Shown here: positions 4,601 through 34,254 of the stretch, piece by piece | Position numbering within the stretch: position 1 is the first letter of the stretch | How the letters are laid out: every line of letters begins with the position of its first letter | Assembly: GCF_032444005.1 (NCBI RefSeq) | Contig: NC_091284.1 | Span: forward strand, 513,422,001-513,486,000 | DNA from: Ranitomeya imitator | Lineage: Eukaryota | Reading direction: 5' to 3' | DNA length: 64,000 bases | The notes under the pieces: generated by a model | What the model saw: the letters and a program-made list of their open reading frames with translations, nothing else | What the model was told of the DNA's origin: nothing | Database searches by the model: none | Made by a program: the position numbers and the translations under genes

Positions 4601-5121
4601 GCAATTTAGAGTGAAGTAAAGATCAAACTTAAAAGCATTATTCCCACTAAATTAAGGATAAGGGATAACTTAGCAATTGTTGGAAGTCCAACTGCTAGGG
4701 CCTCCAGCATTAAACAAAAAAAAAACAAAACAAAAAAAAAACAGGCTCTGCAGGGTCCAGTCTGGAATAAAGTTTGCAGACTTGTCCACCAGCCACTCAT
4801 TGTCTATAGGAATAGCCGAGCGCTGCACTCCTATTTCCCAGGAGTCCTAAAGACAATGAATGGGGCGGAGGTGGAGCTTGTACAAATCTCTGCAGATCCT
4901 GAGTCTGGTTTGGGGTCATGGGGGTCCTAGAGACTGGACCCCCAGTGATCAGTAAGATTTCCCTTCTCCATGTTACTATTTTGGGAATAACCCTTTTAGC
5001 TCCAGATAGCAGACATGATACCTAGGGGTTGTTGTGGAAATAAAATGATTACGTGGCGATGCTGCTGATACCTATGTTGGGAGTGAATGAGATGTATACT
5101 GTCCTGTATTCCAGTGAAAGG

Positions 5122-8100
5122 TCCTGTACCTGTACAGCGTCCACAAACCGTGCAGACCCCCATAATAGAGGACACTGGCCCGCCTGGAGCACACAGCAGT
5201 GTTCACACCAATTACCTTTACCTGTACAGCGTCCACAAACCGTGCAGACCCACATAACAGAGGACACTCACCTCGCTGGAGCATACAGCAGTGGTCACAC
5301 CACAGGTCTGTACCGATACCGCAGCAATAAACCATGCAGACCACATAACAGAGGACACACACCTCCCTGGGGCATACAGCAGTGTTCTCTCCACAGGTCT
5401 GTGCCTGTACCACAGCCATAAACCTTGCAGACCACATAACAGAGGACAATCACCTCCATGGGGCATACAGCAGTGTTCTCACCACAGGTCTGTACCGGTA
5501 CCGCAGCCATAAACCGTGCAGACAACATATCAGAGGACACTCCCCTCCGTGGGGCATACAACAGTGTTCACACCATAGGTCTGTACCGGTACCGCAGCAA
5601 TAAACCGTGCAGACCACATAACAGAGGACACTCACCTCCCTGGGGCATACAGCAGTGTTCTCACCACAGGTCTGTACCGGTACCGCAGCCAAAAACTGTG
5701 CAGACCACATAACAGAGGACACTCACCTCCCTGGGGCATACAGCAGTGTTCACACCACAGGTTTGTACCGGTACCGCAGCCATAAACCGTGCAGCTCCAC
5801 ATAACAGAGGACACTCACCTCCCTGGGACCTACAGCAGTGTTCTCACCACAGGTCTGTACCGGTACCGCAGCCAAAAACCGTGCAGACCACATAACAGAG
5901 GACACTCACCTCCCTGGAGCATACAGCAGTGTTCTCACCACAGGTCTGTACCGGTACCGCAGTCATAAACCGTGCAGCTCCACATAACAGAGGACACTCA
6001 CCTCCCTGGGGCATACAGCAGTGTTCACAACACAGGTCTGTACCGGTACCACAGCCATAAACCGTGCAGCTCCACATAACAGAGGACACTCACCTCCCTG
6101 GGGCATACAGCAGTGTTCTCACCACTGGTCTGTACCGGTACCTCAGCCATAAACCGTGCAAACCACATAACAGAGGACACTCACCTCCCTGGGGCATACA
6201 GCAGTGTTCTCACCACTGGTCTGTACCGGTACCGCAGCCATAAACCGTGCAGACCACATAACAGAGGACACTCACCCCCCTGGGGCATACAGCAGTGTTC
6301 TCACCACAGGTCTGTACCGGTACCGCAGTCATAAACCGTGCAGCTCCACATAACAGAGGACAGTCACCTCCCTGGAGCATACAGCAGTGTTCACACCACA
6401 GGTCTGTACCGGTACCGCAGCCATAAAACGTGCAGACCACCTAACAGAGGACACTCACCTCCCTGGGGCATACAGCAGTGTTCTCACCACAGTTCTGTAC
6501 CGGTACCGCAGCCATAAACCATGCAAACCACATAACAGAGGAAACTCACCTCCCAGGGGCATACAGCAGTGTTCACACCACAGGTCTGTACCGATACCGC
6601 AGCCATAAACCGTGCAGACCACATAACAGAGGACAATCACCTCCCTGGGGCATACAGCAGTGTTCTCACCATAGGTCTGTACCGATACCGGAGCCATAAA
6701 CCGTGCAGACCACATAACAGAGGACAATCACCTCCCTGGGGCATACAGCAGTGTTCTCACCATAGGTCTGTACCGGTACCGCAGCCATAAACCGTGCGGA
6801 CCACATAACAGAGGACACTCACATCCCTGGGGCATACAGCAGTGTTCTCACCAAAGGTCTGTACCGGTACCTCAACCATAAAACGTGCAGGCCACATAAC
6901 AGAGGACACTCACCTCCCTGGGGCATACAGCAGTGTTCTCACCATAGTTCTGTACCGGTACCGCAGTCATAAACCGTGCAGACCAAATAACAGAGGACAC
7001 TCACCTCCCTGGGGCATACAGCAGTGTTCTCACCACAGTTCTGTACCGGTACCACAGCCATAAACCGTGCAGACCAAATAACAGAGGACACTCACCTCCC
7101 TGGGGCATACAGCAGTGTTCTCACCACAGGTCTGTACCGGTACCACAGCCATAAACCGTGCAGACCACATAACAGAGGACACTCACATCCCTGGGGCATA
7201 CAGCAGTGTTCTCACCACAGGTCTGTACCGGTACCACAGCCATAAACCGTGCAGCTCCACATAACAGAGGACACTCACCTCCCTGGGGCATACAGCAGTG
7301 TTCTCACCACAGGTCTGTACCGGTACCACAGCCATAAACCGTGCAGACCACATAACAGAGGACACTCACCTCCCTGGGGCATACAGCAGTGTTCTCCCCA
7401 CAGGTCTGTACCGGTACCGCAGCCATAAACCGTGCAGCTCCACATAACAGAGGACACTCACCTCCCTGGGGCATACAGCAGTGTTCTCCCCACAGGTCTG
7501 TACCGGTACCGCAGCCATAAACCGTGCAGCTCCACATAACAGAGGACACTCACCTCCCTGGGGCATACAGCAGTGTTCACACCACAGGTCTGTACCGGTA
7601 ACACAGCCATAAACCATGCAGACCACATAACAGAGGACACTCACCTCCCTGGGGCATACAGCAGTGTTCACACCAAAGGTCTGTACCGGTACCTCAGCCA
7701 TAAACCGTGCAGACCACATAACAGAGGACACTCACCTCCCTGGGTCATACAGCAGTGTTCTCACCACAGTTCTGTACCGGTACCGCAGCCATAAACCGTG
7801 CAGACCACATAAAAGAGGACACTCACCTCCCTGGGGCATACAGCAGTGTTCACACCACAGGTCTGTACCGGTACCGCAGCCATAAACTGTGCAGACCACA
7901 TAACAGAGGACACTCACCTCCCGGGGGCATACAGCAGTGTTCTCACCACAGGTCTGTACCGGTACCACAGCCATAAACCGTGCAGACCACATAACAGAGG
8001 ACACTCACCTCCCTGGGGTATACAGCAGTGTTCTCACCACAGGTCTGTACCGGTACCGCAGCCATAAACCGGGTAGACCACATAACAGAGGACACTCACC

Positions 8101-11100
8101 TCCCTGGGGCATACAGCAGTGTTCTCACCACAGGTCTGTACCGGTACCGCGGCCATAAACCGTGCAGACCACATAACAGAGGACACTCACCTCCCTGGGG
8201 CATACAGCAGTGTTCTCACCACAGGTCTGTACCGGTACCGCGGCCATAAACCATGCAGACCACATAACAGAGGACACTCACTTCCCTGGGGCATACAGCA
8301 GTATTCTCACCACAAGTCTGTACCGGTACCACAGCCATAATGCGTGCAGCTCCACATAACAGAGGACACTCACCTCCTTGGGGTATACAGCAGTGTTCTC
8401 ACCACAGGTCTGTACCGGTACCGCAGCCATAAACCGTGTAGACCAAATAACAGAGGACACTCACCTCCCTGGGGCATACAGCAGTGTTCTCACCACAGGT
8501 CTGTACCGGTACCGCGGCCATAAACCGTGCAGACCACATAACAGAGGACACTCACCTCCCTGGGGCATACAGCAGTGTTCTCACCACAGGTCTGTACCGG
8601 TACCGCGGCCATAAACCATGCAGACCACATAACAGAGGACACTCACTTCCCTGGGGCATACAGCAGTATTCTCACCACAAGTCTGTACCGGTACCACAGC
8701 CATAATGCGTGCAGCTCCACATAACAGAGGACACTCACCTCCCTGGGGCATACAGCAGTGTTCTCACCACAGATCTGTACCTGTACCGCGGCATTAAACC
8801 GTGCAGACCACATAACAGAGGACACTCACCTCCCTGGGGCATACAGCAGTGTTCTCACCACAGGTCTGTACCGGTACCGCGGCCATAAACCATGCAGACC
8901 ACATAACAGAGGACAATCACCTCCCTGGGGCATACAGCAGTATTCTCACCACAAGTCTGTACCGGTGCCGCGGCCATAAACCATGCAGACCACATAACAG
9001 AGGACACTCACCTCCCTGGGGCATACAGCAGTGTTCTCACCACAGGTCTGTACCGGTACCGCAGCCATAAACCATGCAGACCACATAACAGAGGACACTC
9101 ACCTCCCTGGGGCATACAGCAGTGTTCACACCACAGGTCTGTACCGGTACCATAGCCATAAACCGTGCAGACCACATAACAGAGGACACTCACCTCCCTG
9201 GGGCAAACAGCAGTGTTCACACCACAGGTCTGTACCGGTACCATAGCCATAAACCGTGCAGACCACATAACAGAGGACACTCACCTCCTTGGGGTATACA
9301 GCAGTGTTCTCACCACAGGTCTGTACCGGTACCGCAGCCATAAACCGTGTAGACCACATAACAGAGGACACTCACCTCCCTGGGGCATACAGCAGTGTTC
9401 TCAACACAGGTCTGTACCGGTACCGCGGCCATAAACCGTGCAGACCACATAACAGAGGACACTCACCTCCCTGGGGCATACAGCAGTGTTCTCACCACAG
9501 GTCTGTACCGGTACCGCGGCCATAAACCATGCAGACCACATAACAGAGGACACTCACTTCCCTGGGGCATACAGCAGTATTCTCACCACAAGTCTGTACC
9601 GGTACCACAGCCATAATGCGTGCAGCTCCACATAACAGAGGACACTCACCTCCCTGGGGCATACAGCAGTGTTCTCACCACAGATCTGTACCTGTACCGC
9701 GGCATTAAACCGTGCAGACCACATAACAGAGGACACTCACCTCCCTGGGGCATACAGCAGTGTTCTCACCACAGGTCTGTACCGGTACCGCGGCCATAAA
9801 CCATGCAGACCACATAACAGAGGACAATCACCTCCCTGGGGCATACAGCAGTATTCTCACCACAAGTCTGTACCGGTGCCGCGGCCATAAACCCTGCAGA
9901 CCACATAACAGAGGACACTCACCTCCCTGGGGCATACAGCAGTGTTCTCACCACAGGTCTGTACCGGTACCGCAGCCATAAACCATGCAGCTCCACATAA
10001 CAGAGGACACTCACCTCCCTGGGGCATACAGCAGTGATCTAACCACAAGTCTGTACCGGTACCGCAGCCATAAACCGTGCAGCTCCACATAACAGAGGAC
10101 ACTCACCTCCCTGGGGCATACAGCAGTGTTCACACCACAGGTCTGTACCGGTACCACAGCCATAAACTGTGCAGCTCCACATAACAGAGGACATTCACCT
10201 CCCTGGGGCATACAGCAGTGTTCACACCACAGGTCTGTACTGGTACCTCAGCCATAAACCGTGCAAACCACATAACAGAGGACACTCACCTCCCTGGGAC
10301 ATACAGCAGTGTTCTCACCACTGGTCTGTACCGGTACCGCAGCCATAAACCGTGCAAACCACATAACAAAGGACATTCACCCCCCTGGGGCATACAGCAG
10401 TGTTCTCACCATAGGTCTGTACCGGTACCGCAGCCATAAACCGTGCGGACCACATAACAGAGGACACTCACATCCCTGGGGCATACAGCAGTGTTCTCAC
10501 CATAGGTCTATACCGATACCTCAACCATAAACCATGCAGGCCATATAACAGAGGACACTCACATCCCTGGGGCATACAGCAGGGTTCTCACCACAGGTCT
10601 GTACCGGTACCGCAGCCATAAACCGTGCGGACCACATAACAGAGGACACTCACCTCCCTGGGGCATACAGCAGTGTTCTCACCATGGGTTGGAACCGGTA
10701 CCACAGTCATAAACCATGCAGCTCCACATAACAGAGGACAGTCACCTCCCTGGGGCATACAGCAGTGTTCACACCACAGGACTGTACCGGTACCGCAGCC
10801 ATAAACCGTGCAGACCACCTAACAGAGGACACTCACCTCCCTGGGGCATACAGCAGTGTTCTCACCATAGGTCTGTACCGGTACCTCAACCATAAACCGT
10901 GCAGGCCACATAACAGAGGACACTCACCTCCCTGGGGCATACAGCAGTGTTCTCACCACAGTTCTGTACCGGTACCGCAGCCATAAACCGTGCAGACCAC
11001 ATAACAGAGGACACTCACCTCCCTGGGGCATACAGCAGTGTTCTCACCACAGGTCTGTACCGGTACCGCAGCCATAAACCGTGCGGACCACATAACAGAG

Positions 11101-14100
11101 GACACTCACCTCCCTGGGGCATACAGCAGTGTTCTCACCACAGGTCTGTACCGGTACCGCAGTCATAAACCATGCAGCTCCACATAACAGAGGACAATCA
11201 CCTCCCTGGGGCATACAGCAGTGTTCACACCACAGCACTGTACCGGTACCGCAGCCATAAACCGTGCAGACCACCTAACAGAGGACACTCACCTCCCTGG
11301 GGCATACAGCAGTGTTCTCACCATAGGTCTGTACCGGTACCTCAACCATAAACCGTGCAGGCCACATAACAGAGGACACTCACCTCCCTGGGGCATACAG
11401 CAGTGTTCTCACCACAGTTCTGTACCGGTACCGCAGCCATAAACCGTGCAGACCACATAACAGAGGACACTCCCCTCCCTGGGGCATACAGCAGTGTTCT
11501 CACCACAGGTCTGTACCGGTACCGCAGCCATAAACCGTGCGGACCACATAACAGAGGACACTCACCTCCCTGGGGCATACAGCAGTGTTCTCACTACAGG
11601 TCTGTACCGGTACCGCAGCCATAAACCGTGCAGGCCACATAACAGAGGACACTCACCTCCCTGGGGCATACAGCAGTGTTCTCACCACAGGTCTGTATCG
11701 GTACCGCAGCCATAAACCGTGCAGACCACATAATAGAGGACACTCACCTCCCTGGTGTATACAGCATTGTTCTCACCACAGGTTTGCACCGGTACCGCAG
11801 CCATAAACCATGCAGCTCCACATAACAGAGGACAGTCACCTCCCTGGGGCATACAGCAGTGTTCACACCACAGGACTGTACCGGTACCGCAGCCATAAAC
11901 CGTGCAGACCACCTAACAGAGGACACTCACCTCCCTGGGGCATACAGCAGTGTTCTCACCATAGGTCTGTACCGGTACCTCAACCATAAACCGTGCAGGC
12001 CACATAACAGAGGACACTCACCTCCCTGGGGCATACAGCAGTGTTCTCACCACAGTTCTGTACCGGTACCGCAGCCATAAACCGTGCAGACCACATAACA
12101 GAGGACACTCACCTCCCTGGGGCATACAGCAGTGTTCTCACCACAGGTCTGTACCGGTACCGCAGCCATAAACCGTGCGGACCACATAACAGAGGACACT
12201 CACCTCCCTGGGGCATACAGCAGTGTTCTCACCACAGGTCTGTACCGGTACCGCAGTCATAAACTGTGCAGCTCCACATAACAGAGGACAGTCACCTCCC
12301 TGGGGCATACAGCAGTGTTCACACCACAGGACTGTACCGGTACCGCAGCCATAAACCGTGCAGACCACCTAACAGAGGACACTCACCTCCCTGGGGCATA
12401 CAGCAGTGTTCTCACCATAGGTCTGTACCGGTACCTCAACCATAAACCGTGCAGGCCACATAACAGAGGACACTCACCTCCCTGGGGCATACAGCAGTGT
12501 TCTCACCACAGGTCTGTACCGGTACCGCAGCCATAAACCGTGCAGACCACATAACAGAGGACACTCACCTCCCTGGGGCATACAGCAGTGTTCTCACCAC
12601 AGGTCTGTACCGGTACCGCAGCCATAAACCGTGCGGACCACATAACAGAGGACACTCACCTCCCTGGGGCATACAGCAGTGTTCTCACTACAGGTCTGTA
12701 CCGGTACCGCAGCCATAAACCGTGCAGGCCACATAACAGAGGACACTCACCTCCCTGGGGCATACAGCAGTGTTCTCACCACAGGTCTGTACCGGTACCG
12801 CAGCCATAAACCGTGCAGACCACATAACAGAGGACACTCACCTCCCTGGGGCATACAGCAGTGTTCTCACCACAGGTCTGCACCGATACCGCAGCCATAA
12901 ATCGTGCGGACCACATAACAGATGACACTCACATCCCTGGGGCATACAGCAGTGTTCTCACCACAGGTCTGTACTGGTACCACAGCCATAAACCGTGCAG
13001 CTCCACATAACAGAGGACACTCACCTCCCTGGCGCATACAGCAGTGTTCTCACCACAGGTCTGTACCGGTACCACAGCCATAAACCGTGCAGACCACATA
13101 ACAGAGGACACTCACCTCCCTGGGGCATACAGCAGTGTTCTCCCCACAGGTCTGTACCGGTACCGCAGCCATAAACCGTGCAGCTCCACATAACAGAGGA
13201 CACTCACCTCCCTGGGGCATACAGCAGTGTTCTCACCACAGGTCTGTACCGGTACCGCAGTCATAAACCGTGCAGCTCCACATAACAGAGGACATTCACC
13301 TCCAAGGGGCATACAGCAGTGTTCACACCACAGGTCTGTACCGGTACCACAGCCATAAACCGTGCAGCTCCACATAACAGAGGACACTCACCTCCCTGGG
13401 GCATACAGCAGTGTTCACACCACAGGTCTGTACCGGTACCTCAGCCATAAACCGTGCAAACCACATAACAGAGGACACTCACCTCCCTGGGGCATACAGC
13501 AGTGTTCTCACCACTGGTCTGTGCCGGTACCGCAGCCATAAACCGTGCAGACCACATAACAGAGGACTCACCCCCCTGGGGCATAGAGCAGTGTTCTCAC
13601 CACAGGTCTGTACCGGTACCGCAGTCATAAACCGTGCACCTCCACATAACAGAGGACACTCACCTCCCTGGGGCATACAGCAGTGTTCACACCACAGGTC
13701 TGTACCGGTACCACAGCCATAAACTGTGCAGCTCCACATAACAGAGGACACTCACCTCCCTGGGGCATACAGCAGTGTTCACACCACAGGTCTGTACTGG
13801 TACCTCAGCCATAAACCGTGCAAACCACATAACAGAGAACACTCACCTCCCTGGGGCATACAGCAGTGTTCTCACCACTGGTCTGTACCGATACCGAAGC
13901 CATAAACCGTGCAGACCACATAACAGAGGACACTCACCCCCCTGGGGCATACAGCAGTGTTCTCACCACAGGTCTGTACCGGTACCGCAGTCATAAACTG
14001 TGCAGCTCCACATAACAGAGGACAGTCACCTCCCTGGGGCATACAGCAGTGTTCACACCACAGGTTTGTACCGGTACCGCAGCCTTAAACCGTGCAGACC

Positions 14101-17100
14101 ACCTAACAGAGGACACTCACCTCCCTGGGGCATACAGCAGTGTTCTCACCACAGTTCTGTACCGGTACCACAGTTCTGTACCGGTACCGCAGCCATAAAC
14201 CGTGCAGACCACATAAAAGAGGACACTCACCTCCCTGGGGCATACAGCAGGGTTCTCACCACAGTTCTGAACTGGTACCGCAGCCATAAACCGTGCAGAC
14301 CACATAACAGAGGACACTCACCTCCCTGGGGCATACAGCAGTGTTCACACCACAGGTCTGTACCGATACCGCAGCCATAAACCGTGCAGACCACATAACA
14401 GAGGACACTTACCTCCCTGGGGCATACAGCAGTGTTCTCACCATAGGTCTGTACCAGTACCGCAGCCATAAACCGTGCGGACCACATAACAGAGGACACT
14501 CACATCCCTGGGGCATACAGCAGTGTTCTCACCATAGGTCTGTACCGGTACCTCAACCATAAACCGTGCAGGCCACATAACAGAGGACACTCACCTCCCT
14601 GGGGCATACAGCAGTGTTCTCACCACAGTTCTGTACCGGTACCGCAGCCATAAACCGTGCAGACCAAATAACAGAGGACACTCACCTCCCTGGGGCATAC
14701 AGCAGTGTTCTCACCACAGGTCTGTACCGGTACCGCAGCCATAAACCATGCAGACCACATAACAGAGGACACTCACCTCCCTGGGGCATACAGCAGTGTT
14801 CTCACCACAGGTCTGTACCGGTACCGCAGCCATAAACCGTGCGGACCACATAACAGAGGACACTCACATCCCTGGGGCATACAGCAGTGTTCTCACCACA
14901 GGTCTGTACCGGTACCGCAGCCATAAACCGTGCAGCTCCACATAACAGAGGACACTCACCTCCCTGGGGCATACAGCAGTGTTCTCACCACAGGTCTGTA
15001 CCGGTACCGCAGCCATAAACCGTGCGGACCACATAACAGAGGACACTCACCTCCCTGGGGCATACAGCAGTGTTCACACCACAGGTCTGTACCGGTACCG
15101 CAGCCATAAACTGTGCAGACCACATAACAGAGGACACTCACCTCCCTGGGGCATACAGCAGTGTTCTCACCACAGGTCTGTACCGGTACCACAGCCATAA
15201 ACCGTGCAGACCACATAACAGAGGACACTCACCTCCCTGGGGTATACAGCAGTGTTCTCACCACAGGTCTGTACCGGTACCGCAGCCATAAACCGTGTAG
15301 ACCACATAACAGAGGACACTCACCTCCCTGGTGCATACAGCAGTGTTCTCACCACAGGTCTGTATCGGTACCGCGGCCATAAACCGTGCAGACCACATAA
15401 CAGAGGACACTCACCTCCCTGGGGCATACAGCAGTGTTCTCACCACAGGTCTGTACCGGTACTGCGGCCATAAACCATGCAGACCACATAACAGAGGACA
15501 CTCACTTCCCTGGGGCATACAGCAGTATTCTCACCACAAGTCTGTACCGGTACCACAGCCATAATCCGTGCAGCTCCACATAACAGAGGACACTCACCTC
15601 CCTGGCGCATACAGCAGTGTTCTCACCACAGATCTGTACCTGTACCGCGGCCATAAACCGTGCAGACCACATAACAGAGGACACTCACCTCCCTGGGGCA
15701 TACAGCAGTGTTCTCACCACAGGTCTGTACCGGTACCGCAGCCATAAACCGTGCAGACCACATAACAGAGGACACTCACCTCCCTGGGGCATACAGCAGT
15801 GTTCTCACCACAGTTCTGTACCGGTACCACAGCCATAAACCGTGCAGACCACATAACAGAGGACACTCACCTCCCTGGGGCATACAGCAGTGTTCTCACC
15901 ACAGGTCTGTACCGGTACCGCAGCCATAAACCATGCAGACCACATAACAGAGGACACTCACCTCCCTGGGGCATACAGCAGTGTTCTCCCCACAGGTCTG
16001 TACCGGTACCGCAGCCATAAACCGTGCAGCTCCACATAACAGAGGACACTCACCTCCCTGGGGCATACAGCAGTGTTCTCACCACAGGTCTGTACCGGTA
16101 CCACAGCCATAAACTGTGCAGACCACATAACAGAGGACACTCACCTCCCTGGGGCATACAGCAGTGTTCTCACCACAGGTCTGTACCGGTACCACAGCCA
16201 TAAAGCGTGCAGACCACATAACAGAGGACACTCACCTCCCTGGGGCATACAGCAGTGTTCACACCACAGGTCTGTACCGGTACCACAGCCATAAACTGTG
16301 CAGCTCCACATAACAGAGGACACTCACCTCCCTGGGGCATACAGCAGTGTTCACACCACAGGTCTGTACTGGTACCTCAGCCATAAACCGTGCAAACCAC
16401 ATAACAGAGGACACTCACCTCCCTGGGACATACAGCAGTGTTCTCACCACTGGTCTGTACCGGTACCGCAGCCATAAACCGTGCAGACCACATAACAAAG
16501 GACACTCACCCCCCTGGGGCATACAGCAGTGTTCTCACCATAGGTCTGTACCGGTACCGCAGCCATAAACCGTGCGGACCACATAACAGAGGACACTCAC
16601 ATCCCTGGGGCATACAGCAGTGTTCTCACCATAGGTCTGTACCGATACCTCAACCATAAACCATGCAGGCCACATAACAGAGGACACTCACCTCCCTGGG
16701 GCATACAGCAGGGTTCTCACCACAGGTCTGTACCGGTACCGCAGCCATAAACCGTGCGGACCACATAACAGAGGACACTCACCTCCCTGGGGCATACAGC
16801 AGTGTTCTAACCACAGGTCTGTACCGGTACCACAGTCATAAACCATGCAGCTCCACATAACAGAGGACAGTCACCTCCCTGGGGCATACAGCAGTGTTCA
16901 CACCACAGGACTGTACCGGTACCGCAGCCATAAACCGTGCAGACCACCTAAGAGAGGACACTCACCTCCCTGGGGCATACAGCAGTGTTCTCACCATAGG
17001 TCTGTACCGGTACCTCAACCATAAACCGTGCAGGCCACATAACAGAGGACACTCACCTCCCTGGGGCATACAGCAGTGTTCTCACCACAGTTCTGTACCG

Positions 17101-20100
17101 GTACCGCAGCCATAAACCGTGCAGACCACATAACAGAGGACACTCACCTCCCTGGGGCATACAGCAGTGTTCTCACCACAGGTCTGTACCGGTACCGCAG
17201 CCATAAACCGTGCGGACCACATAACAGAGGACACTCACCTCCCTGGGGCATACAGCAGTGTTCTCACCACAGGTCTGTACCGATACCGCAGCCATAAACC
17301 GTGCAGGCCACATAACAGAGGACACTCACCTCCCTGGGGCCTACAGCAGTGTTCTCACCACAGGTCTGTACCGGTACCGCAGCCATAAACCGTGCAGACC
17401 ACATAACAGAGGACACTCACCTCCCTGGGGCATACAGCAGTGTTCTCACCACAGGTCTGTACCGGTACCGCAGCCATAAATCGTGCGGACCACATAACAG
17501 AGGACACTCACATCCCTGGGGCATACAGCAGTGTTCTCACTACAGGTCTGTACTGGTACCACAGCCATAAACCGTGCAGCTCCACATAACAGAGGACACT
17601 CACCTCCCTGGGGCATACAGCAGTGTTCTCACCAGAGGTCTGTACCGGTACCACAGCCATAAACCGTGCAGACCACATAACAGAGGACACTCACCTCCCT
17701 GGGGCATACAGCAGTGTTCTCACCACAGGTCTGTACCGGTACCGCAGCCATAAACCGTGCAGCTCCGCATAACAGAGGACACTCACCTCCCTGGGGCATA
17801 CAGCAGTGTTCACACCAAAGGTCTGTACCGGAACCTCAGCCATAAACCGTGCAGACCACATAACAGAGGACACTCACCTCCCTGGGGCATACAGCAGTGT
17901 TCTCACCACAGGTCTGTACCGGTACCGCAGTCATAAACCGTGCAGCTCCACATAACAGTGGACATTCACCTCCCTGGGGCAAAAAACAGTGTTCACACCA
18001 CAGGTCTGTACCGGTACCACAGCCATAAACCGTGCAGCTCCACATAACAGAGGACACTCACCTCCCTGGGGCATACAGCAGTGTTCACACCACAGGTCTG
18101 TACCGGTACCTCAGCCATAAACCGTGCAAACCACATAACAGAGGACACTCACCTCCCTGGGGCATACAGCAGTGTTCTCACCACTGGTCTGTGCCGGTAC
18201 CGCAGCCATAAACCGTGCAGACCACATAACAGAGGACACTCACCCCCCTGGGGCATACAGCAGTGTTCTCACCACAGGTCTGTACCGGTACCGCAGTCAT
18301 AAACCGTGCAGCTCCACATAACAGAGGACACTCACCTCCCTGGGGCATACAGAAGTGTTCACACCACAGGTCTGTACCGGTACCACAGCCATAAACTGTG
18401 CAGCTCCACATAACACAGGACACTCACCTCCTTGGGGCATACAGCAGTGTTCTCACCATAGGTCTGTACCGGCACCTCAACCATAAACCGTGCAGGCCAC
18501 ATAACAGAGGACACTCACCTCCCTGGGGCATACAGCAGTGTTCTCACCACAGTTCTGTACCGGTACCGCAGCCATAGACCGTGCAGACCACATAACAGAG
18601 GACACTCACCTCCCTGGGGCATACAGCAGTGTTCTCACCACAGGTCTGTACCGGTACCGCAGCCATAAACCGTGCGTACCACATAACAGAGGACACTCAC
18701 CTCCCTGGGGCATACAGCAGTGTTCTCACTACAGGTCTGTACCGGTACCGCAGCCATAAACCGTGCAGGCCACATAACAGAGGACACTCACCTCCCTGGG
18801 CCATAAAGCAGTGTTCTCACCACAGGTCTGTACCGGTACCGCAGCCATAAACCGTGCAGACCACATAACAGAGGACACTCACCTCCCTGGGGAATACAGC
18901 AGTGTTCTCACCACAGGTCTGCATCGGTACTGCAGCCATAAATCGTGCGGACCACATAACAGAGGACACTCACATCCCTGGGGCATACAGCAGTGTTCTC
19001 ACCACAGGTCTGTACTGGTACCACAGTCATAAACCGTGCAGCTCCACATAACAGAGGACACTCACCTCCCTGGCGCATACAGCAGTGTTCTCACCACAGG
19101 TCTGTACCGGTACCACAGCCATAAACTGTGCAGCTCCACATAACACAGGACACTCACCTCCCTGGGGCATACAGCAGTGTTCTCACCATAGGTCTGTACC
19201 GGTACCTCAACCATAAACCGTGCAGGCCACATAACAGAGGACACTCACCTCCCTGGGGCATACAGCAGTATTCTCACCACAGTTCTGTACCGGTACCGTA
19301 GCCATAAACCGTGCAGACCACATAACAGAGGACACTCACCTCCCTGGGGCATACAGCAGTGTTCTCACCACAGGTCTGTACCGGTACCGCAGCCATAAAC
19401 CGTGCGGACCACATAACAGAGGACACTCACCTCCCTGGGGCATACAGCAGTGTTCTCACTACAGGTCTGTACCGGTACCGCAGCCATAAACCGTGCAGGC
19501 CACATAACAGAGGACACTCACCTCCCTGGGGCATACAGCAGTGTTCTCACCACAGGTCTGTACCGGTACCGCAGCCATAAACCGTGCAGACCACATAACA
19601 GAGGACACTCACCTCCCTGGGGCATACAGCAGTGTTCTCACCACAGGTCTGCACCGGTACCGCAGCCATAAATCGTGCGGACCACATAACAGAGGACACT
19701 CACATCCCTGGGGCATACAGCAGTGTTCTCACCACAGGTCTGTACTGGTACCACAGTCATAAACCGTGCAGCTCCACATAACAGAGGACACTCACCTCCC
19801 TGGCGCATACAGCAGTGTTCTCACCACAGGTCTGTACCGGTACCACAGCCATAAACCGTGCAGACCACATAACAGAGGACACTCACCTCCCTGGGGCATA
19901 CAGCAGTGTTCTCCCCACAGGTCTGTACCGGTACCGCAGCCATAAACCGTGCAGCTCCACATAACAGAGGACACTCACCTCCCTTGGGCATACAGCAGTG
20001 TTCACACCAAAGGTCTGTACCGGTACCTCAGCCATAAACCGTGCAGACCACATAACAGAGGACACTCACCTCCCTGGGGCATACAGCAGTGTTCACACCA

Positions 20101-23100
20101 CAGGTCTGTACCGGTACCGCAGCCATAAACCGTGCAAACCACATAACAGAGGACACTCACCTCCCTGGGGCATACAGCAGTGTTCTCACCACAGGTCTGT
20201 ACCGGTACCGCAGCCATAAACCGTGCAGACCACATAACAGAGGACACTCACCTCCCTGGGGTATACAGCAGTGTTCTCACCACAGGTCTGTACCGGTACC
20301 GCAGCCATAAACCGTGTAGACCACATAACAGAGGACACTCACCTCCCTGGTGCATACAGCAGTGTTCTCACCACAGGTCTGTACCGGTACCGCGGCCATA
20401 AACCGTGCAGACCACATAACAGAGGACACTCACCTCCCTGGGGCATACAGCAGTGTTCTCACCACAGGTCTGTACCGGTACCGCGGCCATAAACCATGCA
20501 GACCACATAACAGAGGACACTCACTTCCCTGGGGCATACAGCAGTATTCTCACCACAAGTCTGTACCGGTACCACAGCCATAATCCGTGCAGCTCCACAT
20601 AACAGAGGACACTCACCTCCCTGGCGCATACAGCAGTGTTCTCACCACAGATCTGTACCTGTACCGCGGCCATAAACCGTGCAGACCACATAACAGAGGA
20701 CACTCACCTCCCTGGGGCATACAGCAGTGTTCTCACCACAGGTCTGTACCGGTACCACAGCCATAAACCGTGCAGACCACATAACAGAGGACACTCACCT
20801 CCCTGGGGCATACAGCAGTGTTCTCACCACAGTTCTGTATCGGTACCACAGCCATAAACCGTGCAGACCACATAACAGAGGACACTCACCTCCCTGGGGC
20901 ATACAGCAGTGTTCTCACCACAGGTCTGTACCGGTACCGCAGCCATAAACCATGCAGACCACATAACAGAGGACACTCACCTCCCTGGGGCATACAGCAG
21001 TGTTCACACCACAGGTCTGTACCGGTACCGCAGCCATAAACCGTGCAGACCACATAACAGAGGACACTCACCTCCCTGGGGCATACAGCAGTGTTCTCCC
21101 CACAGGTCTGTACCGGTACCGCAGCCATAAACCGTGCAGCTCCACATAACAGAGGACACTCACCTCCCTGGGGCATACAGCAGTGTTCACACCACAGGTC
21201 TGTACCGGTACCGCAGCCATAAACTGTGCAGACCACATAACAGAGGACACTCACCTCCCTGGGGCATACAGCAGTGTTCTCACCACAGGTCTGTACCGGT
21301 ACCACAGCCATAAACCGTGCAGACCACATAACAGAGGACACTCACCTCCCTGGGGTATGCAGCAGTGTTCTCACCACAGGTCTGTATCGGTACCGCAGCC
21401 ATAAACCGTGCAGACCACATAACAGAGGACACTCACCTCCCTGGTGCATACAGCAGTGTTCTCACCACAGGTCTGTACCGGTACCGCGGCCATAAACCGT
21501 GCAGACCACATAACAGAGGACACTCACTTCCCTGGGGCATACAGCAGTGTTCTCACCACAGGTCTGTACCGGTACCGCGGCCATAAACCATGCAGACCAC
21601 ATAACAGAGGACACTCACTTCCCTGGGGCATACAGCAGTATTCTCACAAGTCTGTACCGGTACCACAGCCATAATCCGTGCAGCTCCACATAACAGAGGA
21701 CACTCACCTCCCTGGGGCATACAGCAGTGTTCTCACCACAGATCTGTACCTGTACCGCGGCCATAAACCGTGCAGACCACATAACAGAGGACACTCACCT
21801 CCCTGGGGCATACAGCAGTGTTCACACCACAGGTCTGTACCGGTACCGCAGCCATAAACTGTGCAGACCACATAACAGAGGACACTCACCTCCCTGGGGC
21901 ATGCAGCAGTGTTCTCACCACAGGTCTGTACTGGTACCACAGCCATAAACCGTGCAGACCACATAACAGAGGACACTCACCTCCCTGGGGTATACAGCAG
22001 TGTTCTCACCACAGGTCTGTACCGGTACCGCAGCCATAAACCGTGTAGACCACATAACAGAGGACACTCACCTCCCTGGTGCATACAGCAGTGTTCTCAC
22101 CACAGGTCTGTACCGGTACCGCGGCCATAAACCGTGCAGACCACATAACAGAGGACACTCACCTCCCTGGGGCATACAGCAGTGTTCTCACCACAGGTCT
22201 GTACCGGTACCGCGGCCATAAACCATGCAGACCACATAACAGAGGACACTCACTTCCCTGGGGCATACAGCAGTATCCTCACCACAAGTCTGTACCGGTA
22301 CCACAGCCATAATCCGTGCAGCTCCACATAACAGAGGACACTCACCTCCCTGGGGCATACAGCAGTGTTCTCACCACAGATCTGTACCTGTACCGCGGCC
22401 ATAAACCGTGCAGACCACATAACAGAGGACACTCACCTCCCTGGGGCATACAGCAGTGTTCTCACCACAGGTCTGTACCGGTACCGCAGACATAAACCGT
22501 GCAGATCACTTAACAGAGGACACTCACCTCCCTGGGGCATACAGCAGTGTTCTCACCACAGTTCTGTACCGGTACCACAGCCATAAACCGTGCAGACCAC
22601 ATAACAGAGGACACTCACCTCCGTGGGGCATACAGCAGTGTTCTCACCACAGGTCTGTACCGGTACCGCAGCCATAAACCATGCAGACCACATAACAGAG
22701 GACACTCACCTCCCTGGGGCATACAGCAGTGTTCACACCACAGGTCTGTACCGGTACCGCAGCCATAAACCGTGCAGACCACATAACAGAGGACACTCAC
22801 CTCCCTGGGGCATACAGCAGTGTTCTCCCCACAGGTCTGTACCGGTACCGCAGCCATAAACCGTGCAGCTCCACATAACAGAGGACACTCACCTCCCTGG
22901 GGCATACAGCAGTGTTCACACCACAGGTCTGTACCGGTACCGCAGCCATAAACTGTGCGGACCACATAACAGAGGACACTCACCTCCCTGGGGCATACAG
23001 CAGTGTTCTCACCACAGGTCTGTACCGGTACCACAGCCATTAACCGTGCAGACCACATAACAGAGGACACTCACCTCCCTGGGGTATACAGCAGTGTTCT

Positions 23101-25845
23101 CACCACAGGTCTGTATCGGTACCGCAGCCATAAACCGTGCAGACCACATAACAGAGGACACTCACCTCCCTGGTGCATACAGCAGTGTTCTCACCACAGG
23201 TCTGTATCGGTACCGCGGCCATAAACCGTGCAGACCACATAACAGAGGACACTCACCTCCCTGGGGCATACAGCAGTGTTCTCACCACAGGTCTGTACCG
23301 GTACCGCGGCCATAAACCATGCAGACCACATAACAGAGGAAACTCACTTCCCTGGGGCATACAGCAGTATTCTCACCACAAGTCTGTACCGGTACCACAG
23401 CCATAATCCGTGCAGCTCCACATAACAGAGGACACTCACCTCCCTGGGGCATACAGCAGTGTTCTCACCACAGATCTGTACCTGTACCACAGCCATAAAC
23501 CGTGCAGACCACATAACAGAGGACACTCACCTCCTTGGGGTATACAGCAGTGTTCTCACCACAGGTCTGTACCGGTACCGCAGCCATAAACCGTGTAGAC
23601 CACATAACAGAGGACACTCACCTCCCTGGTGCATACAGCAGTGTTCTCACCACAGGTCTGTACCGGTATCGCGGCCATAAACCATGCAGACCACATAACA
23701 GAGGACACTCACCTCCCTGGGGCATACAGCAGTATTCTCACCACAAGTCTGTACCGGTACCGCAGCCATAAACCGTGCAGACCACATAACAGAGGACACT
23801 CACCTCCCTGGGGCATACAGCAGTGTTCTCACCACAGGTCTGTACCGGTACCACAGCCATTAACCGTGCAGACCACATAACAGAGGACACTCACCTCCCT
23901 GGGGTATACAGCAGTGTTCTCACCACAGGTCTGTATCGGTACCGCAGCCATAAACCGTGCTGACCACATAACAGAGGACACTCACCTCCCTGGTGCATAC
24001 AGCAGTGTTCTCACCACAGGTCTGTACCGGTACCGCGGCCATAAACCGTGCAGACCACATAACAGAGGACACTCACCTCCCTGGGGCATACAGCAGTGTT
24101 CTCACCACAGGTCTGTACCGGTACCGCGGCCATAAACCATGCAGACCACATAACAGAGGACACTCACTTCCCTGGGGCATACAGCAGTATTCTCACCACA
24201 AGTCTGTATCGGTACCACAGCCATAATCCGTGCAGCTCCACATAACAGAGGACACTCACCTCCCTGGGGCATACAGCAGTGTTCTCACCACAGATCTGTA
24301 CCTGTACCGCGGCCATAAACCGTGCAGACCACATAACAGAGGACACTCACCTCCCTGGGGCATACAGCAGTGTTCACACCACAGGTCTGTACCGGTACCG
24401 CAGCCATAAACTGTGCAGACCACATAACAGAGGACACTCACCTCCCTGGGGCATACAGCAGTGTTCTCACCACAGGTCTGTACCGGTACCACAGCCATAA
24501 ACCGTGCAGACCACATAACAGAGGACACTCACCTCCCTGGGGTATACAGCAGTGTTCTCACCACAGGTCTGTACCGGTACCGCAGCCATAAACCGTGTAG
24601 ACCACATAACAGAGGACACTCACCTCCCTGGTGCATACAGCAGTGTTCTCACCACAGGTCTGTACCGGTACCGCGGCCATAAACCGTGCAGACCACATAA
24701 CAGAGGACACTCACCTCCCTGGGGCATACAGCAGTGTTCTCACCACAGGTCTGTACCGGTACCACAGCCATAATCCGTGCAGCTCCACATAACAGAGGAC
24801 ACTCACCTCCCTGGGGCATACAGCAGTGTTCTCACCACAGATCTGCACCTGTACCGCGGCCATAAACCGTGCAGACCACATAACAGAGGACACTCACCTC
24901 CCTGGGGCATACAGCAGTGTTCTCAACACAGGTCTGTACCGGTACCGCAGCCATAAACCGTGCAGACCACATAACAGAGGACACTCACCTCCCTGGGGCA
25001 TACAGCAGTGTTCTCACCACAGTTCTGTACCGGTACCACAGCCATAAACCGTGCAGACCACATAACAGAGGACACTCACCTCCCTGGGGCATACAGCAGT
25101 GTTCTCACCACAGGTCTGTACCGGTACCGCAGCCATAAACCATGCAGACCACATAACAGAGGACACTCACCTCCCTGGGGCATACAGCAGTGTTCTCACC
25201 ACAGGTCTGTACCGGTACCGCGGCCATAAACCGTGCAGACCACATAAAAGAGGACACTCACCTCCCTGGGGCATACAGCAGTGTTCTCACCACAGGTCTG
25301 TACCGGTACCGCAGCCATAAACCATGCAGACCACATAACAGAGGACACTCACCTCCCTGGGGCATACAGCAGTGTTCACACCACAGGTCTGTACCGGTAC
25401 CACAGCCATAAACCGTGCATACCACATAACAGAGGACACTCACCTCCCTGGGGCATACAGCAGTGTTCTCACCACAGGTCTGTACCGGTACCGCAGCCAT
25501 AAACCGTGCAGCTCCACATAACAGAGGACACTCACCTCCCTGGGGCATACAGCAGTGTTCTCACCACAGGTCTGTACCGGTACCGCAGCCATAAACCGTG
25601 CAGCTCCACATAACAGAGGACACTCACCTCCCTGGGGCATACAGCAGTGTTCTCACCACAGGTCTGTACCGGTACCGCAGCCATAAACCGTGCAGCTCCA
25701 CATAACAGAGGACACTCACCTCCCTGGGGCATACAGCAGTGTTCTCACCACAGGTCTGTACCGGTACCGCAGCCATAAACCGTGCAGCTCCACATAACAG
25801 AGGACACTCACCTCCCTGGGGCATACAGCAGTGTTCACACCAAAG
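5122..25845. repeat. 91/92-bp tandem satellite, ~225-230 units, ~20.7 kb
   Basis: Consensus CACATAACAGAGGACACTCACCTCCCTGGGGCATACAGCAGTGTTCTCACCACAGGTCTGTACCGGTACCGCAGCCATAAACCGTGCAGAC. A 92-bp variant has GCAGCTCCAC. Central palindrome GTACCGGTAC (overlapping AgeI/KpnI). Units are diverged at the left edge and homogeneous at the right. Confidence 0.97.
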
Positions 25846-25900
25846 CCAACCGCCAGCTAATGTGTAAACACAGTGGACCCAGCAGACTGGATCATTGCTT
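25812..25900 (-). other. ofd1: Putative non-coding exon 1 of ofd1 (5' end uncertain); donor GAG/GTGAGT at 25812/25811
   Basis: First consensus donor on the minus strand downstream of the promoter island; the head-to-head OFD1/TRAPPC2 arrangement is known in mammals. Inference, no transcript evidence. Confidence 0.5.
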
Positions 25901-26215
25901 ACATGGCAACCAATCACAGCAAGAGCCGAGAGCCAACCTTCCTATCAGCAGCAAAGCGAAGTTCCCGCCCCTTCTAGAGTGAAAAGCCTATTTCCGCGTT
26001 CCAAACCTCTTTTTCCTGTAGTTTCCGGTTGTTATAAATAAAGTTATCAAATAGCGGAAGCGAAGATGCCGGAAAATCGTTCGTGTGACGTCATTGCTTG
26101 TTGACTAGCAGGCTAGGTTGTGCATGTGAGTATTTGAGCCTGGACCTGGCCCCTGACAGAGGTGAGCGCCGGGGAACCCCATTGTCGGGAGGGGATTATC
26201 GTGACGTCATTCTGT
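25850..26215. promoter_or_regulatory. Putative bidirectional ofd1/trappc2 promoter
   Basis: Cluster of motifs in the only unique sequence between the two arrays: X-box-like ATTGCTTACATGGCAAC (25894-25910), CCAAT (25910-25914), GC box CCCGCCCC (25964-25971), ETS-like TTCCGG/GCGGAAG/CCGGAA (26023-26075) and two perfect CRE palindromes TGACGTCA (26086-26093, 26202-26209). Confidence 0.7.
26060..26161 (+). other. trappc2: Putative non-coding exon 1 of trappc2 (donor candidates GTGAGT at 26126, GTGAGC at 26162; start uncertain)
   Basis: Two donor-like sites just downstream of the ETS/CRE cluster; the coding exon at 30024 has an acceptor and so needs an upstream exon. Confidence 0.45.

Positions 26216-30023: not shown

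Positions 30024-30197
<174 letters not shown>

Positions 30198-33163: not shown

Positions 33164-34254
<1,091 letters not shown>

What the first reader, a model, noticed from the sequence alone, without database searches (positions are those of the whole stretch)
5122..25845. 20.7-kb satellite made of ~225 copies of a consensus 5' splice site, apparently the amplified ofd1 exon 1/intron 1 junction
Seen: on the minus (ofd1 sense) strand nearly every 91-bp unit reads ...CTGCTGTATGCCCCAGGGAG/GTGAGTGTCC..., i.e. GAG/GTGAGT, a near-perfect U1 match. The array ends abruptly at 25845 inside a partial unit, joined directly to the promoter island (X-box-like, CCAAT, GC, ETS and CRE motifs). The ofd1 first coding exon has an acceptor at 2815 and needs an upstream exon. 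Established: OFD1 and TRAPPC2 are head-to-head in mammals, and U1 binding both defines donors and suppresses premature cleavage/polyadenylation (telescripting). Inference: the unit is the 3' part of ofd1 exon 1 plus the start of intron 1, amplified in place. The result would be a ladder of ~225 competing donors that could lengthen the 5' UTR in 91-nt steps, or a dense U1 landing array over a 23-kb first intron. Copy-number variation could act as a dosage control on an essential ciliary gene.
Basis: partly seen in the sequence, partly recalled or inferred. Interest (0 to 1): 0.82.

Follow-up and report, generated by a model that had tools for sequence, protein, structure and literature searches.

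The report
Satellite grown from ofd1 splice donor
In a poison frog (most likely Ranitomeya imitator), the 91-base stretch across the end of ofd1's first exon and the start of its first intron has been copied head-to-tail about 227 times, so this essential cilia gene carries some 180 intact copies of its own splice donor; this origin is now shown by comparison with a related frog, but any function for the array is unproven.

Summary
Window 5119-25845 holds 227 head-to-tail units of 91/92 bp. On the ofd1-sense strand, 180 units carry the exact 9-mer GAG|GTGAGT.

In Eleutherodactylus coqui, the orthologous trappc2/ofd1 head-to-head promoter is alignable, with blocks of 20/20 and 23/23 identical bases. 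There, the annotated ofd1 exon 1 ends in a single-copy CAGGGAG|GTGAGTGTC. That is 16/16 identical to the unit's donor block, and no tandem repeat follows it. The array also begins and ends at the same phase of the unit, as expected for growth in place.

The unit is therefore about the last 31 nt of exon 1, the donor, and the first 60 nt of intron 1. The array turns a roughly 2-kb first intron into one of about 23 kb.

The functional ideas (donor ladder, U1 landing pad, dosage control) have no support:
- Donor positions -1 and +5 are among the most variable columns.
- CpGs are decaying.
- The array contains no poly(A) hexamers for U1 to suppress.
- Each unit would add three upstream ATGs to the 5' UTR.

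No RNA data could be reached. The most likely reading is a locus-specific satellite that is tolerated, not selected. The scan had noted the flanking promoter island before, but not this origin.

The parts
5119..25845 (-). Tandem array of 227 units of 91/92 bp. Each unit is about the last 31 nt of ofd1 exon 1, the donor GAG|GTGAGT, and about 60 nt of intron 1.
   Evidence: for the array. for the orthology of the donor block to the single-copy E. coqui junction.
25806..25814 (-). First, promoter-proximal copy of the donor GAG|GTGAGT. If it is used, exon 1 ends at 25812.
   Evidence: Sequence. It is the first strong donor downstream of the island on the ofd1 strand, and it aligns to E. coqui 10323-10331.
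5119..5400 (-). Degenerate distal units. They share old variants such as GGTTTGTGGACGCTGTACAGG, and one has lost the GT.
   Evidence: Divergence from consensus rises from 2.1 differences per unit at the promoter end to 4.8 at this end.
25846..26426 (.). Bidirectional trappc2/ofd1 promoter island plus the 5' part of ofd1 exon 1.
   Evidence: CpG o/e is 0.69-0.83 here against 0.35-0.41 in the flanks. The ofd1-side part aligns to E. coqui: BLAST 69% over about 265 nt, and 76% mean column identity in the MAFFT alignment of window 25740-26180.
25904..25926 (-). Conserved 23-mer GCTCTTGCTGTGATTGGTTGCCA, containing an inverted CCAAT box and a GTTGCC half-site.
   Evidence: 23/23 identical to E. coqui.
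25990..26009 (-). Conserved 20-mer GAGGTTTGGAACGCGGAAAT (ETS-like GGAA core).
   Evidence: 20/20 identical to E. coqui.
25899..25907 (-). Weaker alternative donor CAT|GTAAGC inside the island; absent in E. coqui.
   Evidence: PWM 7.7, U1 duplex -4.4 kcal/mol. E. coqui reads CCAGGGGAGG at this point.
2698..2815 (-). ofd1 ATG exon (ATG at 2793-2791), homologous to human exon 2. It has a tandem acceptor cAG/AG at 2817-2814.
   Evidence: The E. coqui orthologue is at L002 12479-12579. Human exon 2 spans c.13-111 (PMC9303915).
1817..2014 (-). ofd1 LisH exon.
   Evidence: Pfam LisH_2, E = 1.5e-14. 100% identical to R. imitator proteins P0122 and P0123.
745..813 (-). Next ofd1 coding exon (DFSIQDLMQLLKINPKSSIYKSL).
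2816..5118 (-). Non-repetitive remainder of the putative ofd1 intron 1. It is CpG-poor and holds transposon fragments.
   Evidence: CpG o/e 0.35; inverted repeats. The only AATAAA and ATTAAA of the intron are at 3684 and 3675.
30024..30137 (+). trappc2 first coding exon (ATG at 30045), preceded by an acceptor.
   Evidence: 100% identical at protein level to the E. coqui exon at L002 7505-7413.
26427..29839 (+). Unrelated 116-bp array on the trappc2 side of the island, split by a 304-bp inverted-repeat element at 29103-29406.
   Evidence: No homologue in the unmasked E. coqui locus.

Best explanation
Origin (shown). This is a satellite born at its present site. A 91-bp piece of ofd1 was duplicated in tandem in the poison-frog lineage and grew to about 227 copies (20.7 kb), presumably by unequal exchange. 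The piece spans the last ~31 nt of the non-coding first exon, its 5' splice site, and the first ~60 nt of intron 1. A related frog, E. coqui, keeps the single-copy state, with a 2.15-kb intron 1.

How it works now (inferred). Transcription starts in the conserved trappc2/ofd1 promoter island and runs through the array. One donor, most likely the cap-proximal first copy, is joined to the acceptor at 2814-2816, so the rest of the array is removed as part of a ~23-kb first intron. The start codon lies in exon 2, so the protein is unaffected. The many donors are passengers of the amplification and are not selected for. They are decaying at the same rate as the rest of the unit, and the array behaves like ordinary methylated repeat DNA.
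For: Orthology:
- ofd1 exon B found E. coqui protein P0124 (91% identical; KAG9492399.1) and its locus L002.
- L002 has trappc2 and ofd1 head-to-head. The ATG exons are at 7505 (minus) and 12484 (plus), 5.0 kb apart, against 27.3 kb here.
- The island aligns with identical blocks of 20/20, 8/8 (GGGGCGGG) and 23/23 bases.
- The annotated exon 1 ends at L002 10325, with CAGGGAG|GTGAGTGTC at 10319-10334. This is 16/16 identical to the unit, occurs once in the locus, and is the only donor there with PWM above 8.1 before exon 2.
- There is no tandem repeat in L002 7000-12806.
- The E. coqui annotation used transcript and homology evidence (PMC10794172).

Growth in place: both array ends share the same unit phase within 1-2 nt. 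A donor this strong has a chance expectation of about 0.002 per 91 nt.

Promoter position: the only CpG-enriched, conserved block between the two ATG exons is 25846-26426. Region 2816-5118 has CpG o/e 0.35.

No selection on the donors.

Methylated-DNA behaviour: CpG columns show C>T counts of 30 and 51 and G>A of 15. Array CpG o/e is 0.41.

No structure or known RNA family: fold z-score +0.3, and no Rfam match.
Against: - No RNA evidence from this species could be reached, so donor choice and even the TSS remain inferred.
- Classical experiments with duplicated strong donors favour the one nearest the acceptor. That would predict very long 5' UTRs, not use of the first copy (own knowledge).
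- The intron-derived 60 nt of the unit do not align significantly with the E. coqui intron (P = 0.67). The right-hand boundary of the original segment is therefore not confirmed by orthology.
- The unit-to-unit junction reads ...ACCT-G-TGGTG, whereas both array edges have T at that position. This is a small mismatch with the simplest duplication model.
- The promoter-proximal units are the most homogeneous. That could reflect constraint instead of recent exchange.
- The R_imi_1.0 annotation (P0122) places other upstream exons at 2921-3628 and at 31147-31179.
Confidence: 0.72

Rival explanations
1. Donor ladder. A substantial share of ofd1 transcripts use downstream copies of the donor. The 5' UTR then grows in 91-nt steps, each adding three upstream ATGs, and this lowers productive ofd1 output. 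Array length would then act as an expression modifier, adaptive or harmful.
For: 180 units keep the exact authentic donor in its authentic -31/+60 context, so the copies are equivalent by sequence. Experiments with duplicated consensus donors favour the acceptor-proximal copy (own knowledge). Each unit carries ATGs at three positions. With the proximal AG of the acceptor, the unit's ATG opens a 17-codon upstream ORF that overlaps the main ATG. The R_imi_1.0 assembly spans the same gene model in at least 2.9 kb less DNA, which hints at length variation.
Against: ofd1 is essential, so UTRs of many kb full of upstream ATGs would be near-null alleles. Cap-proximal donors are favoured for first exons (own knowledge). 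Donor positions are not conserved above background. The shorter span in R_imi_1.0 may be assembly collapse, and one of its contigs appears to break inside the array.
Confidence: 0.2
2. U1 landing array. The dense donors recruit U1 snRNP along 20 kb of nascent RNA. This would promote elongation, suppress premature cleavage and polyadenylation (telescripting), or hold the transcript on chromatin, and the array would be kept for that reason.
For: Predicted U1 pairing is very strong (-12.7 kcal/mol) at 180 sites, plus 147 weaker GTG|GTGAGA sites. The intron grew about tenfold relative to E. coqui.
Against: There is no AATAAA or ATTAAA anywhere in the array. The only two in the intron lie 1.4 kb past its end. 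The array itself creates the extra length it would be protecting. Positions -1 and +5 of the donor are among the most variable columns, and 21% of units have lost the 9-mer. CpG decay is typical of unprotected methylated DNA.
Confidence: 0.08
3. The array lies outside the working ofd1 transcription unit. In this species, ofd1 would start from a promoter or exon between the array and the ATG exon (2816-5118), or would use the island donor CAT|GTAAGC, so the array donors are never part of an exon.
For: The R. imitator R_imi_1.0 model P0122 uses exons at 3560-3628 and 2921-3094 spliced to 2815. A strong donor CAG|GTAAGA sits at 3559, and a new donor-like CAT|GTAAGC sits at 25902 in the island.
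Against: Region 2816-5118 is CpG-poor (o/e 0.35) and transposon-derived. The P0122 exons have no counterpart in E. coqui or other OFD1 proteins. One of them reads through a TAA in this assembly, and the model's first exon lies inside a trappc2 intron. That annotation is homology-based (PMC12715915). The island donor is weak (PWM 7.7, -4.4 kcal/mol).
Confidence: 0.1
4. A dispersed, genome-wide satellite or transposon-borne repeat that happened to land next to the promoter and happens to contain a donor-like motif.
For: The rest of this genome could not be searched. Frog genomes are rich in transposon-derived arrays, and the neighbouring 116-bp array has no E. coqui counterpart.
Against: There is a 16/16 match to the single-copy orthologous exon 1 donor at the matching distance from the conserved island. 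Both ends share the same phase. No other copy occurs in the window. Nothing turned up in the scan's notes, in two metagenome scans, or among proteins translated from public assemblies; these blanks are weak evidence.
Confidence: 0.03

Closest known systems
Gene-fragment-derived satellites and tandem arrays born in place
   Same: A short piece of a gene is amplified head-to-tail to tens of kb. There are variant units, degenerate edge units, and CpG decay. The progenitor is still recognisable.
   Different: The progenitor here is an exon/intron junction, so every unit carries a working-type 5' splice site in sense orientation inside the parent gene's own first intron. It is known from one locus only so far.
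Duplicated or competing 5' splice sites in splicing experiments (tandem-donor minigenes)
   Same: Identical strong donors lie in series upstream of one acceptor.
   Different: This is a natural allele of an essential gene, with about 180-227 copies at 91-nt spacing over 20 kb, against 2-3 copies within a few hundred nt in the experiments.
Recursive splice sites in long first introns (Drosophila Ubx type; vertebrate RS-exons)
   Same: A long first intron contains internal 5' splice site motifs. Each unit also has a CCCCAG just upstream of the donor.
   Different: The AG and the GT are 4 nt apart (CAG|GGAG|GT), not adjacent. The pyrimidine tract is poor. Each recursive step would leave 4 nt behind, and U1 and U2AF sites would overlap (inference).
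U1 telescripting and U1-site-rich chromatin-retained RNAs
   Same: High density of U1-complementary sites on a nascent transcript.
   Different: There are no poly(A) signals in the array to suppress, and no sign that the sites are conserved.
Spliced-leader RNA gene arrays (nematodes, trypanosomes, some chordates)
   Same: Tandem units each hold a short exon followed by a consensus donor.
   Different: The units here have no promoter of their own and no clear Sm site. SL trans-splicing is not known in vertebrates. The unit is demonstrably a piece of ofd1.
Intronic VNTRs and minisatellites near promoters of vertebrate genes
   Same: A repeat of variable length in intron 1, close to the promoter, that could modulate expression.
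   Different: This array is much larger, and its unit contains the gene's own exon 1 end and donor.

Membership tests
Tandem repeat / satellite DNA | Head-to-tail units of constant length in a long array | tested here: met
   227 units of 91/92 bp over 20.7 kb at 92-94% identity.
Tandem repeat / satellite DNA | Family present at many loci or abundant genome-wide (classical satellite) | not testable with these tools
   Only this window is readable. There were blanks in scan notes, metagenome scans and translated public assemblies, and these are not informative.
In-place amplification of a local single-copy segment | Array is a whole number of units with both ends in the same phase | tested here: met
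   The array starts at CT|TTGGTG and ends at GACCT|, within 1-2 nt of the same phase. Chance is about 3-5%.
In-place amplification of a local single-copy segment | Single-copy homologue at the orthologous position in a relative without the array | tested here: met
   E. coqui L002 10319-10334 is 16/16 identical and occurs once, downstream of the aligned island. No tandem repeat is present there.
In-place amplification of a local single-copy segment | Whole unit, including its intron-derived part, alignable to the relative | tested here: not met
   The intron-derived 60 nt give P = 0.67 against shuffles, and the exon-derived 31 nt alone give P = 0.93. Only the 16-mer and the flank before the array align.
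U2-type GT-AG 5' splice site | Match to the 9-nt consensus and U1 complementarity | tested here: met
   GAG|GTGAGT: PWM 11.4 against 12.6 for the consensus, and -12.7 against -14.0 kcal/mol. The PWM is approximate and recalled from memory.
U2-type GT-AG 5' splice site | Orthologous site is an annotated exon end | tested here: met
   The E. coqui model KAG9492399.1 joins ...CAGGGAG to GCCAAATG.... That annotation used transcripts and homology (PMC10794172). Support for this particular junction was not seen directly.
U2-type GT-AG 5' splice site | Used in RNA of this species | not testable with these tools
   No transcript-derived sequence of this species was reachable.
Recursive splice site | Acceptor AG directly abutting a donor GT, preceded by a pyrimidine tract | tested here: not met
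   CCCCAG-GGAG-GTGAGT: there are 4 nt between the AG and the GT.
U1 telescripting element | Cryptic poly(A) signals within reach that need suppression | tested here: not met
   0 AATAAA or ATTAAA in 20.7 kb of array. The nearest are at 3684 and 3675.
Functional, selected repeat motif | Motif columns less variable than the rest of the unit | tested here: not met
   Donor columns against the rest give P = 0.31. The -1 and +5 columns have 21 and 17 variant units. Exon part plus core against the intron part give P = 0.07-0.13.
Conserved trappc2/ofd1 bidirectional promoter | Head-to-head genes with a conserved block between them | tested here: met
   Both frogs have this arrangement. The aligned stretch (window 25740-26180) shows 76% mean column identity, with perfect 20- and 23-mers.
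Known RNA family (Rfam) | Covariance-model match | tested here: not met
   There was no hit to either repeat unit at E <= 1.

The most novel reading that the evidence does not exclude
The array is a working part of ofd1 regulation. Its ~180 authentic donors compete or cooperate, through U1 loading, donor choice, or stepwise removal of the 23-kb intron, so that the repeat number sets how much productive ofd1 mRNA is made. Copy-number differences between individuals would then act as a tunable dosage allele of an essential cilia gene. A broader version: this genome tends to seed satellites at RNA-processing signals, since the scan also noted arrays of histone H1 3'-end signals.
Probability: 0.12. 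Interest if true: 0.85.

Novelty: new variant of a known kind. Interest (0 to 1): 0.6.

Why it matters
This is a rare case where a satellite's birth can be traced to the base. The progenitor is a functional exon/intron junction that still sits as a single copy in a related frog.

It is also a ready-made natural experiment on how the spliceosome chooses among many identical, authentic 5' splice sites spread over 20 kb of a first intron. The question is whether it prefers the copy nearest the cap or the one nearest the acceptor. RNA-seq data published for Ranitomeya imitator, to which I had no access here, should be able to answer this.

If repeat number varies and affects ofd1 output, it would be a new kind of dosage variant in a ciliopathy gene. 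If not, it shows how much repeat load and how many decoy donors an essential gene's first intron can tolerate.

Tried and rejected
- **Start-codon idea.** The unit reads ATG CCC CAG GGA G|GT. With the distal AG of the acceptor this is in frame with exon 2 (MPQG-DSIFSGQ-MSQ...). It recalls human MMAQ|SNMF, and human exon 1 holds the ATG and c.1-12 (PMC6732318, PMC9303915). I rejected it because E. coqui lacks this ATG (…GGTGCAGGGAG|GT) and the intron phase would differ from human.
- **Higher-order repeat.** TRF reports periods of 182 and 456, but no unit lag stands out. Rejected.
- **Relic units near exon 2.** The best nhmmer hit outside the array is 2875-2927 on the minus strand, E = 0.046. 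This is not significant.
- **RNA structure or known RNA family.** Fold z-score is +0.3 and there is no Rfam hit.
- **Satellite seen through its ORFs in public assemblies.** None found.
- **Exact-ORF look-ups for other samples of this species.** Four attempts found nothing on record.
- **Bullfrog trappc2 locus and both R. imitator R_imi_1.0 contigs.** The genes are listed, but no DNA is served.
- **Metagenome scans with 27-mer and 22-mer unit patterns.** No hits.
- **Spliced 140-aa trappc2 or ~130-aa ofd1 N-terminus as a query.** I left this out because those strings have no reference and would have had to be typed.
- **The trappc2-side 116-bp unit.** It has no counterpart in the unmasked E. 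coqui locus, so nothing can be said about its origin.

Full report
**1. What is there**

Tandem Repeats Finder reports one array at 5119-25842 with period 91. I cut the minus strand at a conserved anchor and obtained 227 units: 172 of 91 bp, 51 of 92 bp, and 4 odd ones.
- There are 144 distinct unit sequences, with a mean of 3.3 differences from the consensus.
- Identity between units does not depend on their distance (0.934-0.941 at lags of 1-20 units). The 182- and 456-bp periods from TRF are therefore not a real higher-order repeat.
- Only two short block duplications show up: 9 units at a lag of 55, and 7 units at a lag of 10.
- Divergence from consensus rises from 2.1 differences per unit next to the promoter to 4.8 at the far end. 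The last three units share old variants, and one has lost its GT.

On the ofd1-sense (minus) strand, GAGGTGAGT occurs 180 times and GTGAGT 206 times. GAGGTGAGT does not occur elsewhere in the window on either strand. All listed matches of a 27-mer around it lie in the array.

**2. The genes**

On the minus strand lie three ofd1 exons:
- The ATG exon MSQGELKSLSQEELRKRLYQTFKKKGVLDSLK, with coding part 2698-2793.
- A LisH_2 exon at 1817-2014 (Pfam E = 1.5e-14).
- The next coding exon at 745-813.

These exons are 100% identical to two Ranitomeya imitator proteins (CAJ0927592.1 and CAJ0938752.1). The window is therefore R. imitator or a very close relative.

On the plus strand lie four trappc2 coding exons from 30024 to 34532 (Sedlin_N). 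The two ATGs face away from each other, 27.3 kb apart.

Between them, the only CpG-enriched non-transposon block is 25846-26426 (CpG o/e 0.69-0.83). Region 2816-5118 has 0.35, the 91-bp array 0.41, and the 116-bp array 0.22.

**3. The donor is strong and unlikely by chance**

I scored sites with an approximate vertebrate 5' splice-site matrix (from memory) and a U1 5'-end duplex energy. The unit's site scores 11.4 and -12.7 kcal/mol. The consensus CAG|GTAAGT scores 12.6 and -14.0. The three coding-exon donors and two candidate trappc2 exon-1 donors scored in this window range from 5.8 to 9.9.

In 79.7 kb of non-satellite strand, only 2 sites reach 11.4. A random 91-nt unit would therefore have one on a given strand with P of about 0.002.

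**4. The decisive comparison**

A search of protein-cluster representatives with the LisH exon returned an Eleutherodactylus coqui protein, P0124 (91% identical; KAG9492399.1). Its locus L002 comes from assembly GCA_019857665.1 (species per PMC12270160).

L002 shows the single-copy state:
- trappc2 and ofd1 are head-to-head, with ATG exons at 7505 (minus) and 12484 (plus), only 5.0 kb apart.
- Our island aligns to L002 9990-10300. Perfectly conserved blocks are GAGGTTTGGAACGCGGAAAT (20/20), GGGGCGGG, and GCTCTTGCTGTGATTGGTTGCCA (23/23), followed by CTGGC(G/A)GTTGG right at the edge of our array.
- The annotated exon 1 of E. coqui runs through this block and ends at 10325. The 16 bases CAGGGAG|GTGAGTGTC at 10319-10334 are identical to the unit's donor block. 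They occur once in the locus. They form the only donor there with PWM above 8.1 before exon 2.
- No tandem repeat exists between trappc2 and ofd1 exon 2 in the unmasked sequence.
- Intron 1 is about 2.15 kb long.

The E. coqui gene set was built with transcript and homology evidence (PMC10794172). I did not see the evidence for this particular junction.

The 13 bases GTGTGAACACTGC and the ATG of our unit have no counterpart in E. coqui. Beyond the 16-mer, the intron-derived part of the unit is not significantly similar to the E. coqui intron (P = 0.67).

**5. Growth in place**

The array starts at ...GGTTGG-CT|TTGGTGTGAAC and ends at ...GGTACAGGACCT|TTCACTGG. Both ends fall at the same point of the unit within 1-2 nt (chance about 3-5%).

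Together with the orthology, this means one local 91-bp segment was duplicated and then expanded. A foreign repeat was not inserted.

One detail does not fit the simplest model. The unit-to-unit junction has G where both edges have T; 5 units still have T. A substitution that spread through the array would explain it.

**6. The acceptor**

E. coqui has ...CCTTTTCAG|GCCAAATG. Our frog has ...ATCTTTTCTG-GCCAAATG, so the orthologous AG is gone (A to T at 2800). An upstream TTTTTCAG-AG at 2817-2814 is the only plausible acceptor.

The R_imi_1.0 model P0122 also joins to 2815. In human OFD1, exon 1 carries the 5' UTR and the ATG (PMC6732318), and exon 2 spans c.13-111 (PMC9303915). Our ATG exon ends at the same ...LK| position as human c.111, judged from the human protein sequence as I remember it.

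**7. Is the donor motif kept by selection?**

- Variant counts across the nine donor columns are 0, 6, 21, 0, 2, 1, 1, 17, 1. The median is 1, against 3 for the other columns (Mann-Whitney P = 0.31).
- The two positions that matter most after GT, namely -1 G and +5 G, rank 9th and 11th of 92 columns for variability.
- Leaving out CpG and indel columns, the exon-derived part plus core does not differ significantly from the intron-derived part (P = 0.07-0.13).
- CpG columns show the usual C>T and G>A excess (30, 51, 15). This points to germ-line methylation.

**8. Tests of the proposed functions**

- The array has no AATAAA or ATTAAA. The only two in the putative intron are at 3684 and 3675. Telescripting therefore has nothing to suppress inside the array.
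- Each unit has three ATGs. With the proximal AG of the acceptor, the unit's ATG opens a 17-codon upstream ORF that overlaps the main ATG. Longer 5' UTRs would therefore be poorly translated.
- The CCCCAG upstream of each donor is 4 nt away from the GT, so these are not recursive splice sites. U1 and U2AF binding would overlap (inference).
- The RNA has no unusual structure (z-score +0.3) and no Rfam match.

**9. Other assemblies**

In R_imi_1.0 (GCA_958301615.1; species per PMC12715915), one contig carries model P0122 in 28,475 nt. The same model needs more than 31,300 nt here. Another contig begins 2,890 nt upstream of the ATG, which is about 6 units inside the array if the flanks are collinear.

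This fits either real length variation or collapse and breakage of an older assembly at the repeat. No DNA from that assembly was obtainable.

P0122's extra upstream exons (31147-31179, 3560-3628, 2921-3094) are not shared with E. coqui or other OFD1 proteins. One reads through a TAA in this assembly. I treat them as prediction artefacts, but they keep the 'TSS downstream of the array' rival alive.

**10. Verdict**

- Shown: the array, its donor content, its place between the conserved promoter and the ATG exon, and its descent from the single-copy exon 1/intron 1 junction.
- Inferred: that it is transcribed as part of a ~23-kb intron 1 and removed; that the first donor is the one mainly used; and that the array is tolerated, not selected.
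- Not testable here: RNA usage, genome-wide distribution of the unit, and copy-number variation.

The scan had already noted the island between two arrays (s1-279763), and gene-end-derived arrays elsewhere in this genome (s1-292465 and related notes). The latter are unchecked by me and may reflect what readers tend to notice.

Noticed in passing
window 26427-29101 and 29407-29839; insertion 29103-29406: An unrelated 116-bp tandem array (23 + 3.7 copies) sits on the trappc2 side of the promoter island, probably in trappc2 intron 1. It is split by a 304-bp CpG-rich element (o/e 1.86) with about 19-bp terminal inverted repeats (GGCTACGTTCAGACTAGCG...). Its two ends are not in the same unit phase. 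It has no counterpart in the unmasked E. coqui locus.
   Followed up: partly
window 33318-34254 (+): The trappc2 intron between the exons ending at 33317 and starting at 34255 begins ATATCCTTT and ends ...TTTTAC. These are the hallmarks of a U12-type AT-AC intron.
   Followed up: no
window 2797-2817 (-) versus L002 12470-12483: The ancestral ofd1 exon 2 acceptor (cag|GCCAAATG in E. coqui) reads ctg in this frog. An AG 15-17 nt further upstream (tandem cAG-AG) must have taken over, so both ends of intron 1 have changed in this lineage.
   Followed up: partly
window 31147-31179, 3560-3628, 2921-3094 (-): R. imitator R_imi_1.0 protein CAJ0927592.1 (P0122) is a gene model whose first exon lies inside a trappc2 intron. 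Two further 'coding' exons lie between the array and the ATG exon, and one has Q where this assembly has a TAA stop. The model looks like an annotation artefact spanning the array.
   Followed up: partly
window 2875-2927 (-): The best match to the 91-bp unit outside the array (nhmmer E = 0.046; CAGGGA...CTGTTAGGTGG...GGCTGCTGTA) lies 60 nt upstream of the ofd1 exon 2 acceptor in the same orientation. It is not significant, and could be chance or a very old relic.
   Followed up: partly
window 49979-50430, 50843-51699, 53115-53594: A 53-bp G-rich array of 16 copies has GC skew +0.8. It is flanked on both sides by 51/62-bp arrays of a GCCCCATA(T/A)AATGCTCCATACAG motif. This is possibly one composite repeat element.
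   Followed up: no
window 56720-56859 and 62285-62362: There are degenerate telomere-like repeats: GTTAGGG variants on the plus strand at 56.7 kb, and CCCTAA-like variants at 62.3 kb. They are in opposite orientation and about 5.5 kb apart.
   Followed up: no
L002 29817-30370 (-): In E. coqui, a second Sedlin_N ORF lies downstream inside the ofd1 gene region, on the opposite strand. It is 111 aa and includes an uninterrupted copy of the last trappc2 exon. This is probably a processed trappc2 retrocopy.
   Followed up: no
window 34146-34532 (+): The last trappc2 intron (34341-34433) has no in-frame stop, so the last two coding exons read through as one 128-aa ORF. The same is true in several other vertebrates, judging from ORF-level hits P0001-P0013.
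   Followed up: no
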